A DNA stretch of 64,000 nt, taken from contig NW_020844495.1 of the NCBI RefSeq assembly GCF_003704095.1, positions 124,001 to 188,000 on the forward strand, given 5' to 3'. A program made the position numbers and the translations under genes. The stretch comes from Pocillopora damicornis. Lineage: Eukaryota. The notes under the pieces were generated by a model that worked only from the letters and a program-made list of their open reading frames with translations, was not told the DNA's origin and made no database searches. Positions 10,535 to 62,364 of this stretch are shown in pieces (position 1 is the first letter of the stretch; every line of letters starts with the position of its first letter).

Positions 10535-11064
10535 TTACCATTTACAATATGAGTACGCTTGCATGCAGGACGAGTTCATGGATGAAATAGGTGCTGTGTA
10601 GGAATAAGAATTCCCGTAAGAGTTTGAGTAGTCATATGTTGGTTGATATTGGTTTGGGTAGTAATTTCCCACTGAGTTGCCAAAATCACTCGAATAACAT
10701 GGCTGACCTTCGCGGATTAAAACAGGCACCGGCACAGTTCTGGGATAGAGCGAGTGAGAATCTTTAAACTCTCCTGCTTCTGTTGCTTGCTTCTTTTGCT
10801 TGTATCGATGATTCTGGAACCATATTTTGACTTGTGTTGGCGTCAAGTTGATCATCCGTCCCAGTTGTTCCCTTTCTGGGGCTGACAAGTAGCGCTGATA
10901 TCTAAATCGTCTTTCCAGTTCGTAGATTTGGTGTTTGGTGAAGAGTACCCGTCGCTTTCTTTTCTTTGGAACATCGCTAGACTCATCTCTGTTGATTTTT
11001 GGAGCTTGCTGTAGCACGTCGTTCCCTGCACAGTCTTCGTTCATCTCAGGATGTGGTCGAGGAC
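10535..11064 (-). CDS. Nkx2.2: NK2 gene A, coding exon 2 (homeodomain + NK2-SD); spliced protein ~239 aa
   Basis: Acceptor ctttcgttcgattag|GT; [34 protein letters not shown]...WFQNHRYK; NK2-[18 protein letters not shown]; Tyr-rich tail ending in W. Confidence 0.95.
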
Positions 11065-11631
11065 CTAATCGAACGAAAGCGGGTAAAGGCGTTTGATGAG
11101 ATTCGATAACACCGATTAAGAGGTGATTTGGTTTTAAACTACCAGCGAGGCGGAGCCGAAGTCAATGACTCTTATGTTATACAAGTTTCTACTCTTTACT
11201 TAGAAAAGCTATCGAAAGCAGCGTGAACCGAAGAGGCGAGTTACATGAGTTTAAAAAACTACAAGGGAAAAAAAAAAATCGTAATTTATGATGGCAGTTT
11301 GGCGTTCTTAGGATTTTCAGCATAATCGCGCCTATCTTTAATTTGCTTAGCACCGACTTTCATCTCCTGTGGCTTAAAAAGTATCAAAATATGGAACCGC
11401 TGCTCTTAAGCTTGTTTCTTTTCACTGCGTCTCTCTACAGATGACGCTCACTTACAAAGATGACATTTCATGTCCTTGGTCACGAAAATCGAATAACAAT
11501 CTGGTGCGAGATTCACCATAACCTGACAGGTAAGTAAGCGCTTGTCTGAGTCATCTGCGCTCAAAACAGACAAATCTCAGAGGAAATTTGTGGCATGGAA
11601 AACAGAATTTAGACTCAAACCCTGTACCTAC

Positions 11632-11821
11632 CCGAAGTGTTGTCTTGGCTTTGCGGACCGGATGGAGGCATCGTCGTTATTATGCAATTAGATCCTGTAG
11701 AACGATCGGGGGAGAGATTAACACCTTGGCAAATGTTAGGAACCCGTGGAGAAGCGTTGGAGCAGCTTTGAAGACACGATTCCGGCAAGCTGAGGATGTT
11801 CTTCACGGAAAAAGAAGACAT
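11632..11821 (-). CDS. Nkx2.2: NK2 gene A, coding exon 1 (TN/eh1 motif MSSFSVKNILSL)
   Basis: ATG at 11821; TN-like motif; donor G|GTAGGT after 11632; 190 nt (phase 1), in frame with exon 2. Confidence 0.88.
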
Positions 11822-11953
11822 AACGCGAGCCCTGACGGACGCTACTCAAGATGGCTGCTGGCCTATTGACTGTACACAGATCAAAGAGTAGGTAGGAATG
11901 TGTGGGTTGGTTAATGAGTGAGCTTGAGACACGTCATGTATGACTCGCCTGAA

Positions 11954-12032
11954 TTGACATAGAACACATGTTATTATTCACTGTTTGAGGAGAATTTATT
12001 TAGGGTGATAAAAAGATGTCACCCCTTTGACA
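11954..12032 (-). promoter_or_regulatory. Proximal promoter element of gene A
   Basis: 19-mer at 11954-11972 is 16/19 identical to the gene B promoter; TGACA/TGTCA at 11955, 12017, 12028. Confidence 0.55.
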
Positions 12033-60500: not shown

Positions 60501-61295
60501 TCCTATAATAGACGTTGATCATGTCCCAAGAAACCCACGCAAAGGAGACTAACAACAATAAAAAATCGTTTCTTTGTTGGCGCAAACTGCGTCCGGTTGA
60601 TTTCTTTTCGTACACTGAGAAGTTTATTGTTATTTAATGGCCAGTAGAAAAGGATATCCTAATCCCTGAGTTTGTCAGTGGCTCTTACATATTACTTAGT
60701 AGATTACAAAATCTTATGACCATATACAACTTGTTTGCCAAGATCTCGGCAAATATTGCAATTCTATGTTAAACCGAGCCGTTGTCACAGGGCAGTTTGA
60801 CTTGAAGACAATAAAACTCTCAACAATAAACACCCAGCAGTGAGGATTTATCAAATGTTTCGCGCCTATGGTGAGAATCTTAAGACTTCTGTTCTTAGAG
60901 TCCTTGTCGGCTGAGAATGAAGTATTTCATGAGCAGGAATACAAATAGATATGACCGGTAATCTTTTGTACATAAGCTAGTGTTGCACATGGCGAAACTT
61001 CAAGAACTCTTCAAACGAAGCTTAACCCTAAAGCTTTTTCAAAGTAAACTGGGCCACCAGCTTAAGAACACAGACTGTTCTGTTTCATCACAGACTTGTC
61101 TGGCAAATTTTGAATGTTAAAAAGCGATAATCTTGAAGGTATTACACAAAACGTCTAATGTTGAATGGAATACGAAATATTAACCCCTAGAGTAACAGCT
61201 AAGTTGTATAAACACGAACGGGATTAGATGTTTGGTTGCGTTAGTAGCGTCAAAATAACTGACTCGAACGCTATTTACTAAAGCATTACTCTAAT

Positions 61296-61780
61296 CTAAG
61301 AAAAGCCCCAGAAGCGATTATTGTATACAGCGCCGGTGCTCGAGTACAGGAAAGGCACTGGAGGATAACCGGAGAATCCATTACTGAATTCCTGCCTTGG
61401 AGTGGTTAAAGTTCTATGTCTATAACAAGGCTGGCCTTCATGTACAAGAACAGGGACGGGAACAAGTCTTGGGCTCATGAAAGGCAAGGCCTCGCTCGCA
61501 AGATGTCCTTTATCCCCGATCTGCTTCTTGAATTTATACCGGTGATTCTGAAACCATATTTTTACTTGTGTCGGAGAGAGGTTTATAAGTCGAGCTAACT
61601 GTTCCCGTTCTGGCGCAGAAAGGTACCGTTGCTGTCTAAAGCGTCTCTCAAGTTCGAAGATCTGCGCCTTAGAGAATAGCACTCTTCGTTTTCGCTTTTT
61701 AGTGTTGGGAATTTCAGTTTCTGGGTCATTTTCGTTTTCGTTGCTAAAATCCTCTACATCGAGTCTCTCTGTAGAATCAG
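61296..61780 (-). CDS. Nkx2.2: NK2 gene E, coding exon 2 (homeodomain + NK2-SD); ~230 aa spliced
   Basis: Acceptor ttttcttccttttattttag|CT; [34 protein letters not shown]...WFQNHRYK; NK2-[18 protein letters not shown]. Confidence 0.95.
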
Positions 61781-62156
61781 CTAAAATAAAAGGAAGAAAA
61801 ATGTTAAAAACGGAAATGACGATCGACGAACTGAAAAACAGAATGCAGGAACGCGGAACACTGACGCAAATTTTTCGCACGCTTCGTGAATTTGATTTTG
61901 CGCGATGCATTTCTTGCGTGATTACACTTTCTTGCTGAGTTTGTTTATGTGTCTCGTGTAAAATCCAAAACATGAAAATTTTCTTTTACATGTAACCCTT
62001 GGTTAAGTACTTGATGCGCAATTTAAGAATATGGCAAGTAGAATATTGCGATTGTGACACTTGAGTCTCCACTTATCGACAAAAATAGAATTTATAGAGC
62101 CGATTGAAGACAACTGAACTGCGAGGGAAATATGGGGATGTTAGCTGGGTCTGTAC

Positions 62157-62364
62157 CTTCGTAAGAAGATTGTTCCGTTCCACGAGCTGGACTTGAATCT
62201 GGAGAACTACTGTTACGTTCTTCACACTTAGACGTACTGATCCCTTGGTCTCGAAGTTCTTCAAGGCTCAGGCTAGTTACATTTTTGCGAGTTTCGTTTC
62301 CTTGCCTTCTTCCACACTTGCTCTCCTCAAGAGCGAGAATACTGTCTATCGAAAACGAGCTCAT
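62157..62364 (-). CDS. Nkx2.2: NK2 gene E, coding exon 1 (eh1 motif MSSFSIDSILAL)
   Basis: ATG at 62364; best donor AG|GTACAG after 62157; 208 nt (phase 1); this donor is less certain than the others. Confidence 0.8.

What the first reader, a model, noticed from the sequence alone, without database searches (positions are those of the whole stretch)
10535..62364. Uninterrupted cluster of five Nkx2.2/vnd-like homeobox genes with identical architecture
Seen: five intact two-exon genes in ~52 kb (- - + + -), each with a TN/eh1 exon, a phase-1 intron and a Tyr54 homeodomain, with no other gene recognisable between them. Known: the homeodomain RKRRVLF(S/T)KAQ.(Y/F)[17 protein letters not shown] is Nkx2.2/vnd-type, and anthozoans are known to have several Nkx2.2/vnd paralogs, so the expansion itself is not new. 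Inference: the proteins are highly diverged outside the domains, so the duplications are old, and retained linkage with large gene-free spacers suggests a shared regulatory landscape rather than a recent tandem array.
Basis: partly seen in the sequence, partly recalled or inferred. Interest (0 to 1): 0.75.

Follow-up and report, generated by a model that had tools for sequence, protein, structure and literature searches.

The report
Coral NK2 homeobox gene cluster
This stretch of a Pocillopora coral genome holds five old, linked NK2-type homeobox genes, the coral copy of a cluster already described in sea anemones, and one spacer carries an extra leader exon that is spliced onto one of these genes and perhaps a second.

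Summary
The window (scaffold C1130:124001-188000 of a 234-Mb, 4393-contig assembly; gene 5 is identical to P. damicornis pdam_00016675) has exactly five homeodomains, oriented - - + + -. Each gene has an eh1/TN first exon, a phase-1 GT..AG intron and a Tyr54 homeodomain. All five junctions are matched by spliced database proteins, and the gene-3 junction by RNA contigs in 4 of 4 runs.

The duplications are old. Homeobox third-codon identity is 0.30-0.47, and each paralog has orthologs in other scleractinians. Three have named sea-anemone orthologs (Nematostella Nkx2.2C, Nkx2.2E, XP_032229509).

The cluster as a kind is in print: five NK-2 homeodomains in Nematostella (Ryan 2006), NK2 genes clustered on chromosome 2 (Zimmermann 2023), and an xrn2-nkx2-msx-cnga block in Acropora (Lin 2024).

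Two corrections:
- Gene 4 falls outside the NK2.2/vnd group and is equidistant from vnd and NK2.1. Its family stays open.
- The spacers are not wholly empty. A leader exon U (31632-32273, +) ends in ATG GAA CAA G and splices into gene 3 behind the eh1 motif (2 of 4 runs, plus RefSeq isoforms). In one contig it joins the first base of gene 4 exon 2, 21 kb away.

Verdict: a real, ordinary member of a known cluster, with one possibly new transcript-level link.

The parts
10535..11064 (-). g1 exon 2: homeodomain 10784-10963, NK2-SD ([13 protein letters not shown]), stop codon 10535-10537
11632..11821 (-). g1 exon 1: ATG at 11821, eh1/TN motif FSVKNIL, phase-1 donor after 11632. It also has an internal acceptor (ctacag|GA, about 11696) that matches the one used by the Oculina X2 isoform.
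13361..13424 (-). Candidate alternative leader exon of g1. It is 59% identical over 22 aa to the alternative first exon of Oculina g1 isoform X2 (P0282), and a GT donor follows base 13361. It is not confirmed by reads.
26935..27425 (-). g2 exon 2: homeodomain 27142-27321, NK2-SD, stop codon
27875..28082 (-). g2 exon 1: ATG at 28055 (MTSFSVRDIL), or the upstream ATG at 28082 that is used in P0002/P0003. Phase-1 donor after 27875.
31632..32273 (+). Leader exon U in the g2-g3 spacer. It ends ...ATG GAA CAA G|GTATGT (phase-1 donor). It is spliced to 35412 inside g3 exon 1, and in one contig it is followed by the start of g4 exon 2.
35372..35540 (+). g3 exon 1 (coding part; an RNA contig starts at 35336). 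eh1/TN motif FSIRDIL, internal acceptor with first base 35412 behind the motif, phase-1 donor after 35540.
36217..36656 (+). g3 exon 2: homeodomain 36285-36464, no canonical NK2-SD, stop codon
49771..50020 (+). g4 exon 1: ATG at 49798, or at 49771 as in pdam_00016674. eh1-like motif FSIDGIL, phase-1 donor after 50020.
53457..53989 (+). g4 exon 2: homeodomain 53525-53704. A conserved Cys/Pro-rich motif ([20 protein letters not shown]) stands where the NK2-SD would be. Stop codon.
61296..61780 (-). g5 exon 2: homeodomain 61518-61697, NK2-SD ([13 protein letters not shown]), stop codon
62157..62364 (-). g5 exon 1: ATG at 62364, eh1/TN motif FSIDSIL, phase-1 donor after 62157

Best explanation
WHAT IT IS. 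The window holds the Pocillopora damicornis copy of the ancient anthozoan NK2 homeobox cluster. It consists of five paralogous transcription-factor genes, and each is orthologous to a distinct gene in other stony corals. At least three of the five are orthologous to Nematostella genes: g1 to Nkx2.2C, g2 to XP_032229509/SJX71983, and g3 to Nkx2.2E.

HOW IT WORKS. Each gene encodes an N-terminal eh1/TN motif and an NK2-type homeodomain with Tyr54, split by one phase-1 intron. From what is known of NK2 proteins, the eh1/TN motif is the Groucho/TLE docking site (inferred here, not tested). g1, g2 and g5 keep the NK2-specific domain; g3 and g4 have lost or replaced it. The genes are transcribed and spliced as predicted (shown). 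The proteins most likely act as sequence-specific DNA binders that repress through Groucho (inferred).

ISOFORMS. Alternative upstream leader exons give isoforms without the eh1 motif. This is shown for g3, and it is supported for g1 only by an Oculina RefSeq isoform and a homologous stretch in the window.

FAMILY. Four genes belong with NK2.2/vnd. g4 is a divergent, scleractinian-wide lineage whose place between NK2.1 and NK2.2 is unresolved.

LINKAGE. The linkage is inherited from the common ancestor of corals and sea anemones. It is not a recent tandem array.
For: IDENTITY AND STRUCTURE. There are five PF00046 domains and exactly five homeodomain loci in the window, with none elsewhere on the 220,644-bp scaffold. 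g5 is 100% identical to pdam_00016675 and g4 to pdam_00016674. Phase-1 GT..AG introns occur in 5 of 5 genes, and spliced proteins match every junction. The g3 joint is seen in 4 of 4 RNA runs.

ORTHOGROUPS. FastTree support is g1 98 (18 rows), g2 98 (27), g3 99 (28), g4 100 (17) and g5 100 (17). In the careful homeodomain tree the supports are g1 97/93, g3 100/97 and g4 99/93.

NAMED ORTHOLOGS.

AGE. Third-codon identity is 0.30-0.47 in 10 of 10 paralog pairs.

LINKAGE ELSEWHERE.
- Stylophora: PFX23113, 23114, 23115, 23117 and 23118 correspond to g3, g4, g5, g1 and g2, all listed with contig length 498,131.
- Nematostella: EDO33946 and EDO33947 are consecutive, XP_032229508 and 509 are consecutive, and C, E and the g2-type gene are all listed with a 22,031,953-bp chromosome.
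- Actinostola: QZH41_015267, 68 and 69 are consecutive locus tags.

LITERATURE. Five NK-2 homeodomains in Nematostella (PMC1779571, passages). NK2 genes clustered on chromosome 2 (PMC10719294, passages). An xrn2-nkx2-msx-related-cnga block in Acropora millepora (PMC11175523, passages).

EH1-LESS g3 ISOFORM. The joint 32271(+2)->35410(+2) occurs in 2 of 4 runs. Proteins that start MEQEDRIRS come from P. verrucosa, Stylophora and Oculina, and the P. damicornis RefSeq model P0323 (296 aa) holds the same junction internally.
Against: - Accession runs and equal contig lengths show neighbourhood only. The Stylophora accession order (g3, g4, g5, ?, g1, g2) is not collinear with the window if the numbers follow position.
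- No named sea-anemone ortholog was seen for g4. Its closest non-scleractinian relatives (P0137, P0141, P0142) come from unnamed ENA and Logan assemblies.
- The actiniarian genes nearest g5 (Actinia XP_031549676, Actinostola QZH41_015267) join g1+g5 only at 80/89, not g5 itself.
- Nematostella Nkx2.2A and B were never seen, so one-to-one orthology of all five genes is not shown.
- Groucho binding, DNA specificity and expression domains are all inferred.
- The runs laid were Logan contigs, which cannot give expression levels, transcript starts or strand.
Confidence: 0.85

Rival explanations
1. Part of the cluster is run as one transcription unit. Leader exon U carries a start codon and a phase-1 donor, and it is regularly spliced in frame onto g3 (behind its eh1 motif) or onto g4 exon 2. 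Shared exon use would then be one reason why linkage, strand and intron phase are kept.
For: - An X10 contig of 670 nt covers 31632-32273 and then runs on for 29 letters.
- Those letters match the window only at 53457-53485, starting at the first base of g4 exon 2. There is 1 mismatch, and 0 of 100 shuffles gave a match.
- The mismatch is the N/D variant already seen in P0121 and P0299.
- Both joints are in frame, because U ends ATG GAA CAA G and both acceptors complete a Glu codon.
- The two exon ends share no 31-mer. A de Bruijn assembly chimera is therefore unlikely (inference).
Against: - The support is one contig in 1 of 4 runs, at mean word depth 9.66.
- The cap on read laying allowed no check on the g4 side.
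- No stored protein starts with the U-to-g4 reading.
- Read-through splicing from an upstream gene onto exon 2 of the next same-strand gene is a common by-product without function (general knowledge).
- RefSeq keeps g3 and g4 as separate genes under different names.
Confidence: 0.3
2. g4 is the cnidarian counterpart of bilaterian NK2.1. The cluster would then be homologous to the linked nkx2.1-nkx2.2 pair of bilaterians, and would not be an expansion of NK2.2 alone.
For: - In FastTree on 274 rows the g4 clade is sister to the named Nkx-2.1/2.4/TTF-1 rows, with support 88.
- g4 shares Val13 and Lys24 with NK2.1.
- Bits against vnd and TTF-1 are tied at 88.0 and 87.8.
- A g4+NK2.1 clade is not rejected (delta lnL 2.67, p-AU 0.446).
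- UniProt calls the Stylophora ortholog Nkx-2.4.
- Lin et al. 2024 report xrn2, the bilaterian neighbour of nkx2.1, next to nkx2 genes in two corals (PMC11175523, passages).
Against: - The careful tree puts the g4 lineage as sister to the NK2.2 group (92/92) and leaves NK2.1 as a basal grade.
- Val13 and Lys24 also occur in this genome's NK4-like and NK3-like genes, so they may be ancestral states.
- With an NK2.1-like query the best hit in this genome is g2 (110 bits), and g4 is fifth (95.0).
- Only 60 columns were available.
- XRN_N matches lie on other contigs, not on C1130.
- Sinigaglia et al. 2013 state that nk2.1 has no clear cnidarian ortholog (PMC3586664, passage).
Confidence: 0.2
3. 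The five genes are a recent, lineage-specific tandem array of one Nkx2.2 gene.
For: The genes are adjacent, share one exon-intron plan and have 72-90% identical homeodomains.
Against: - Third-codon positions are near saturation at 0.30-0.47, and the longest identical run is 8-23 nt.
- The proteins cannot be aligned outside the three motifs.
- Each paralog has its own orthologs in complex and robust corals, and three of the five have them in sea anemones.
Confidence: 0.02

Closest known systems
Nematostella vectensis NK2 cluster (Nkx2.2A-E; five NK-2 homeodomains in Ryan et al. 2006; 'NK2 genes clustered separately on chromosome 2' in Zimmermann et al. 2023)
   Same: Both have five NK2-type genes. 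Orthologs of g1 (Nkx2.2C), g3 (Nkx2.2E) and g2 (XP_032229509/SJX71983) are listed with one 22-Mb chromosome and carry consecutive accession numbers. The proteins have the same TN motif, homeodomain and NK2-SD.
   Different: Order and orientation in Nematostella were not seen here, because supplementary figures were closed. Orthologs of g4 and g5 were not identified among the Nematostella genes. Leader exon U and eh1-less isoforms are not mentioned in the passages I read.
Bilaterian Nkx2.2 / Drosophila vnd (NK2.2 family)
   Same: They share a Tyr54 homeodomain, the TN/eh1 motif, the NK2-SD (in g1, g2, g5) and an intron between TN and homeodomain. vnd is the best solved relative of g1, g2, g3 and g5. 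g2 is the best hit in this genome for amphioxus NKX2-2 (148.8 bits).
   Different: There are five paralogs here instead of one or two. g3 and g4 lack a canonical NK2-SD. g4 lies outside the NK2.2 group in the tree.
Bilaterian nkx2.1-nkx2.2 linked pair / deuterostome pharyngeal cluster (xrn2, nkx2.1, nkx2.2, msx, cnga ...; Lin et al. 2024)
   Same: Both are tight linkages of NK2 paralogs away from the NK cluster. In this genome the NK4-, NK3- and Msx-like genes lie on another contig, C1527. A block of xrn2, nkx2, msx-related and cnga is reported in Acropora millepora (PMC11175523, passages).
   Different: No gene here is a clear NK2.1. No XRN_N match and no further homeobox lies on the 220-kb scaffold.
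Read-through or shared-leader transcripts of clustered homeobox genes (for example shared 5' exons in vertebrate Hox clusters; recalled, no paper read here)
   Same: An upstream exon is spliced onto the coding exons of two neighbouring same-strand homeobox genes.
   Different: Here the leader would donate the start codon and remove the Groucho motif. The evidence for the second target (g4) is one contig.

Membership tests
NK2 class homeobox genes | Homeodomain with Tyr at position 54 | tested here: met
   NHRYK is present in 5 of 5 homeodomains. PF00046 gives E 3.9e-19 to 6.4e-21.
NK2 class homeobox genes | N-terminal TN/eh1 motif (FSxxxIL). That this motif defines the class is recalled. | tested here: met
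   FSVKNIL, FSVRDIL, FSIRDIL, FSIDGIL and FSIDSIL occur in the five first exons.
NK2 class homeobox genes | NK2-specific domain (VPVLV..G.PC) behind the homeodomain. That this domain defines the class is recalled. | tested here: inconclusive
   It is present in g1, g2 and g5. g3 has only a degenerate [10 protein letters not shown]. g4 has a different conserved Cys/Pro motif. It is also present in the NK4-like gene on C1527.
NK2.2 / vnd family | The homeodomain groups with bilaterian NK2.2/vnd rather than NK2.1 or NK4. | tested here: inconclusive
   g1, g2, g3 and g5 lie inside the 65-row NK2.2 group (93/81). g4 lies outside it. The advantage of vnd over TTF-1 in bits is g1 +5.8, g2 +16.0, g3 +11.9, g4 +0.2 and g5 +6.1.
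NK2.1 family (asked for g4 only) | Reciprocal best match and a clade with bilaterian NK2.1 | tested here: inconclusive
   With an NK2.1-like query g4 is only the fifth best hit in this genome, so the reciprocal test is not met. FastTree gives a sister relation at 88. The careful tree does not. The AU test does not reject the clade (p 0.446).
Anthozoan NK2 cluster (Nematostella Nkx2.2A-E type) | One-to-one orthology with the named Nematostella genes | tested here: inconclusive
   This is met for g1 (Nkx2.2C), g3 (Nkx2.2E) and g2 (XP_032229509/SJX71983). Nkx2.2A and B were never retrieved, so g4 and g5 remain open.
Anthozoan NK2 cluster (Nematostella Nkx2.2A-E type) | The paralogs are neighbours on one chromosome in other anthozoans. 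| tested here: met
   There are runs of consecutive accession numbers or locus tags in Stylophora, Nematostella and Actinostola. PMC10719294 reports the same (passages).

The most novel reading that the evidence does not exclude
The five genes are more than neighbours. A start-codon-bearing leader exon U sits in the g2-g3 spacer. Because every gene in the cluster keeps the same phase-1 intron, U can be spliced in frame onto more than one cluster gene: g3 behind its eh1 motif, and g4 at exon 2. This yields homeodomain proteins without the Groucho-docking motif from one shared promoter. Exon sharing of this kind would explain why linkage, strand arrangement and intron phase have been kept since before corals and sea anemones split. 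A similar eh1-skipping leader may serve g1.
Probability: 0.25. Interest if true: 0.7.

Novelty: new member of a known kind. Interest (0 to 1): 0.4.

Why it matters
As a cluster it adds little. Anthozoan NK2 paralogs and their linkage are in print, and this is the Pocillopora instance with exact gene models.

It is useful as a clean, fully intact reference copy: five genes, each junction confirmed, and no other coding gene detected between them. That suits comparison of order, orientation and non-coding elements across corals and anemones.

Two points could matter more:
- Isoforms that drop the eh1/TN motif through alternative leader exons would let one NK2 gene change its co-repressor use. This is supported by RNA contigs and by RefSeq models in four coral species.
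- If the leader exon really serves two genes, it would be direct evidence for shared regulation inside a cnidarian homeobox cluster. The authors of the sea-anemone genome paper argue that such clusters are under little constraint.

The open position of g4 bears on whether the NK2.1/NK2.2 split predates the cnidarian-bilaterian ancestor.

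Tried and rejected
I used accession runs, locus tags and contig lengths from the search for homologous proteins and the listing of cluster members instead. These show neighbourhood, not order.
- xrn2 ADJACENCY. XRN_N (PF03159) matches in this genome lie on C464 and C1914, and none lies on C1130. This says little, because the scaffold is only 220 kb.
- OTHER FEATURES IN THE SPACERS. Of the spacer ORFs of at least 90 aa, 0 of 14 reach a Pfam cut-off. Three sub-threshold hits of 12.9 to 17.3 bits (Peptidase_C16, CagL, PycTM) were dismissed. 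Rfam and ARAGORN found nothing.
- PROTEIN ATLAS FOR g4. Only generic homeodomain clusters came back, at 0.85-0.88, which is uninformative.
- FASTTREE CAVEATS. The FastTree run held one row that I had translated out of frame (the NK3-like row). It was corrected before the careful tree. In that FastTree the NK4-like row nested among the NK2.2 rows. I take this as an artefact of having no other NK4 sequence.
- ROWS DROPPED. P0255 was dropped because it has no complete homeodomain. Of 134 unique homeodomains, 43 were dropped (31 near-identical rows from the NK2.2 group and 12 from the NK2.1 group). That left 91 rows. The Daphnia partial row was left outside the AU constraint.
- NOT RUN. I did not run an AU test of 'all anthozoan genes in one clade', because the taxon of many unnamed rows is unknown.
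- SPLICED MODELS. All searches used single exons.
- PAPERS. Eight paper searches were run. None listed a paper on a shared leader exon or on eh1-less isoforms of cnidarian NK2 genes. None of the eight asked for such terms, so they do not show that this is absent from print. Supplementary Figs 8-9 and data file 6 of PMC10719294, and S26 Fig of PMC11175523, may already give the order and orientation of the NK2 genes in Nematostella and Acropora.
- PAPERS READ AS PASSAGES ONLY. PMC12381260, PMC10719294, PMC10598428, PMC1779571, PMC3939940, PMC3586664, PMC11175523 and PMC6208414.

Full report
SOURCE OF THE WINDOW. The window is G000:C1130:124001-188000, on a 220,644-bp scaffold of an assembly of 234,350,878 bases in 4393 contigs. 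Gene 5 is 100% identical to P. damicornis pdam_00016675, and gene 4 to pdam_00016674. The assembly size fits the published P. damicornis genome of 234 Mb with 26,077 gene models (PMC6208414, passages read).

- tblastn of the exon ORFs against the window finds exactly five homeodomain loci.
- Pfam PF00046 hits 5 of 5 second exons and 0 of 5 first exons.
- The genes lie at 10535-11821(-), 26935-28082(-), 35372-36656(+), 49771-53989(+) and 61296-62364(-).
- Each first exon carries an eh1/TN motif: FSVKNIL, FSVRDIL, FSIRDIL, FSIDGIL, FSIDSIL.
- Each homeodomain has Tyr54.
- Each gene has one phase-1 GT..AG intron, of 567, 449, 676, 3436 and 376 nt.

THE JUNCTIONS ARE SUPPORTED. For every gene, stored database proteins hold the end of exon 1 and the start of exon 2 with exactly one residue between them. 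The counts are g1 1, g2 3, g3 7, g4 2 and g5 5. Many of these come from Logan contigs of about 2 kb, and an ORF without the intron can only be cDNA (inference). P0341 is 100% identical across the g1 junction. RNA contigs of 4 of 4 runs from four studies show the g3 joint 35540->36217.

WHAT THE GENES ARE.
- A scan of the whole genome with the g2 homeodomain exon gives 69 matches at E<=1e-5. The five best-scoring NK2-type loci are the five window genes, and no other homeobox lies on C1130.
- The next best match is on contig C1527. It is an NK4-like gene with Tyr54 and an NK2-SD, and 3.4 kb from it lies an NK3-like gene, with an Msx-like gene nearby. So the NK cluster proper is elsewhere, as in Nematostella (PMC10719294, passages).
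- Against solved structures, the bits for vnd / TTF-1 / Nkx2.5 are:
  - g1 101.6 / 95.8 / 83.8
  - g2 113.3 / 97.3 / 84.6
  - g3 101.5 / 89.6 / 78.2
  - g4 88.0 / 87.8 / 76.0
  - g5 107.3 / 101.2 / 92.7.

ORTHOLOGS AND AGE.
- Three word searches and three cluster look-ups give each paralog its own orthologs.
  - g1: Stylophora PFX23117, Orbicella, Oculina, Desmophyllum, Porites lobata, Nematostella Nkx2.2C, Actinostola QZH41_015268.
  - g2: Stylophora PFX23118, Montipora, Acropora millepora vnd1 (A0MV33), Nematostella XP_032229509/SJX71983, Actinia, Actinostola QZH41_015269.
  - g3: Stylophora PFX23113, P. verrucosa, P. meandrina, Oculina, Montipora, Nematostella Nkx2.2E.
  - g4: Stylophora PFX23114, P. 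verrucosa, Oculina, five Acropora species, Montipora foliosa.
  - g5: Stylophora PFX23115, A. digitifera, Montipora, Porites harrisoni.
- In a FastTree of 274 rows the five orthogroups have supports of 98 to 100.
- Third-codon identity between the five homeoboxes is 0.30-0.47 in all 10 pairs, with longest identical runs of 8-23 nt. Synonymous sites are therefore near saturation, and there is no sign of recent gene conversion.
- The duplications predate the split of complex and robust corals for all five genes, and the split of corals and sea anemones for at least g1, g2 and g3.

The indirect evidence is as follows.
- The five Stylophora orthologs have five of six consecutive GenBank accession numbers and are listed with one contig length (498,131).
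- Nematostella EDO33946 and EDO33947 (g2- and g1-type) are consecutive on a 365,242-bp scaffold. XP_032229508 and 509 (g3- and g2-type) are consecutive. All three genes are listed with the 22,031,953-bp chromosome.
- Actinostola QZH41_015267, 68 and 69 are consecutive locus tags.
- Orthologs in Montipora capricornis (g2, g3, g5), Oculina (g1, g3, g4), A. digitifera (g4, g5) and Actinia (g2-type and a g1/g5-related gene) share contig lengths.
- A g2-type and a g3-type protein both come from a 16,285-bp Logan contig.
[quoted passage not shown] All three were read as passages only.
So the cluster as a kind is known, and this is its Pocillopora member.

GENE 4 IS THE ODD ONE.
- Its homeodomain differs from the others at Val13, Gln15, Val22 and Lys24. 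Its NK2-SD is replaced by a motif, [20 protein letters not shown], that is conserved across Scleractinia.
- In the careful homeodomain tree (91 rows, 60 columns, rooted on the Msx-like gene) the g4 clade joins three unnamed non-scleractinian-type sequences (P0137 and P0141 in the tree; P0142 has the same homeodomain) at 98/89.
- This lineage is sister to a 65-row group (93/81) that holds bilaterian NK2.2/vnd and g1, g2, g3 and g5. The two together have support 92/92, and the NK2.1 rows form an unresolved basal grade.
- FastTree had put g4 next to NK2.1 (88).
- A forced g4+NK2.1 clade costs 2.67 lnL and is not rejected (p-AU 0.446).
- With an NK2.1-like query the best hit in this genome is g2 and g4 is fifth. 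With amphioxus NKX2-2, g2 is first and g4 seventh.
- Val13 and Lys24 also occur in the NK4-like and NK3-like genes, so they may be ancestral states.
I conclude that four genes are NK2.2/vnd-type and that the family of g4 is open. This fits the statement that nk2.1 has no clear cnidarian ortholog (PMC3586664, passage).

THE SPACERS.
- From coding sequence to coding sequence they measure 15.1, 7.3, 13.1 and 7.3 kb.
- Five genes in 51.8 kb is one per 10.4 kb, close to the genome mean of about one per 9 kb. 'Large gene-free spacers' is therefore overstated, although the genes themselves are short.
- No spacer ORF of at least 90 aa (0 of 14) reaches a Pfam cut-off, and there is no Rfam family or tRNA.

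LEADER EXON U. One spacer is not empty.
- The RefSeq model XP_027038903 (P0323) starts in the 193-aa ORF at 31862-32443.
- RNA contigs show an exon from at least 31632 to 32273 that ends ...ATG GAA CAA G|GTATGT. It is spliced to an internal acceptor of g3 exon 1 (first base 35412), just behind the eh1 motif. This occurs in 2 of 4 runs, one with 131 letters on the shorter side.
- The canonical g3 first exon is also expressed: an X10 contig starts at 35336.
- The eh1-less reading MEQ-EDRIRS... is annotated in P. verrucosa (X2), Stylophora (X2) and Oculina.
- Oculina also has a g1 isoform (X2, P0282) whose alternative first exon joins behind the eh1 motif. Its exon has a 59%-identical counterpart at 13359-13424(-) followed by a GT donor, and the matching internal acceptor is present in g1 exon 1. 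P0341, which begins at MPPSG, may stem from such a transcript (inference).

A POSSIBLE LINK BETWEEN g3 AND g4.
- In run X10 a 670-nt contig covers 31632-32273 and continues with 29 letters that lie on nothing in the stretch laid.
- These letters match the window only at 53457-53485, which begins at the first base of g4 exon 2. There is one mismatch, and 0 of 100 shuffles gave a match. The mismatch is the Asn/Asp variant seen in P0121 and P0299.
- The joint is in frame. The 29-letter overhang is what a 31-mer assembly leaves at a branch.
- This suggests that U can be spliced over 21 kb, past all of g3, onto g4.
It may be read-through splicing without function.
- The same run also holds a g2 transcript contig (loose end at 27125-27154).

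VERDICT. This is a real, intact and expressed five-gene NK2 cluster. It is an ordinary member of a known anthozoan cluster. The eh1-skipping leader exons, and the possible sharing of exon U by g3 and g4, are the only parts that may be new.

Noticed in passing
L001 (G000:C1527:386000-395999) 7742-8350(-) and 3878-4312(-); L004 1223-1762(+); L005 1288-1626(-): An NK4-like gene (Tyr54, NK2-SD-like [13 protein letters not shown]) and an NK3-like gene lie 3.4 kb apart on the same strand. An Msx-like homeobox lies about 27 kb away and a further homeobox about 46 kb away on the same contig. This is probably the NK cluster of this coral.
   Followed up: partly
window 53705-53989 (+): Behind its homeodomain g4 carries a Cys/Pro-rich motif ([20 protein letters not shown]) that is nearly invariant in orthologs from Pocillopora, Stylophora, Oculina, Acropora and Montipora. 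It stands where other NK2 proteins have the NK2-SD. Its function is unknown.
   Followed up: partly
window 13359-13424 (-) and 11696 (-): There is a possible alternative leader exon of g1 and a matching internal acceptor behind the eh1 motif, homologous to those of Oculina g1 isoform X2. No in-frame ATG was seen in the Pocillopora copy, so translation would start at the internal Met (MPPSG).
   Followed up: partly
window 36417-36451 (+) and 27125-27154 (-): A contig of run X10 lies on the end of the g3 homeobox and runs on as g2 sequence. g2 and g3 share a 23-nt identical run there. This shows that g2 is transcribed in that run, and that short pieces of one paralog can be laid on another.
   Followed up: partly
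L002 (G000:C1130:104001-114000) 236-928 (-): A 231-aa ORF with an ephrin-receptor ligand-binding domain (PF01404, E 1.1e-10) lies about 20 kb upstream of the window start. It belongs to a flanking Eph-receptor-like gene.
   Followed up: no
window 31674-35327: Low-depth contigs (about 3 to 6) of all four runs laid (three filed as RNA, X2 guessed to be RNA) tile most of the g2-g3 spacer. This may be the unspliced intron of the U-to-g3 transcript or genomic DNA in the libraries. The two cannot be told apart with contigs.
   Followed up: no
window 89-261, 623-632, 774-873, 3294-3393, 3799-4143: There are five runs of N (728 bases in all) in the first 4.2 kb, outside the cluster. They were left as they are.
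   Followed up: no
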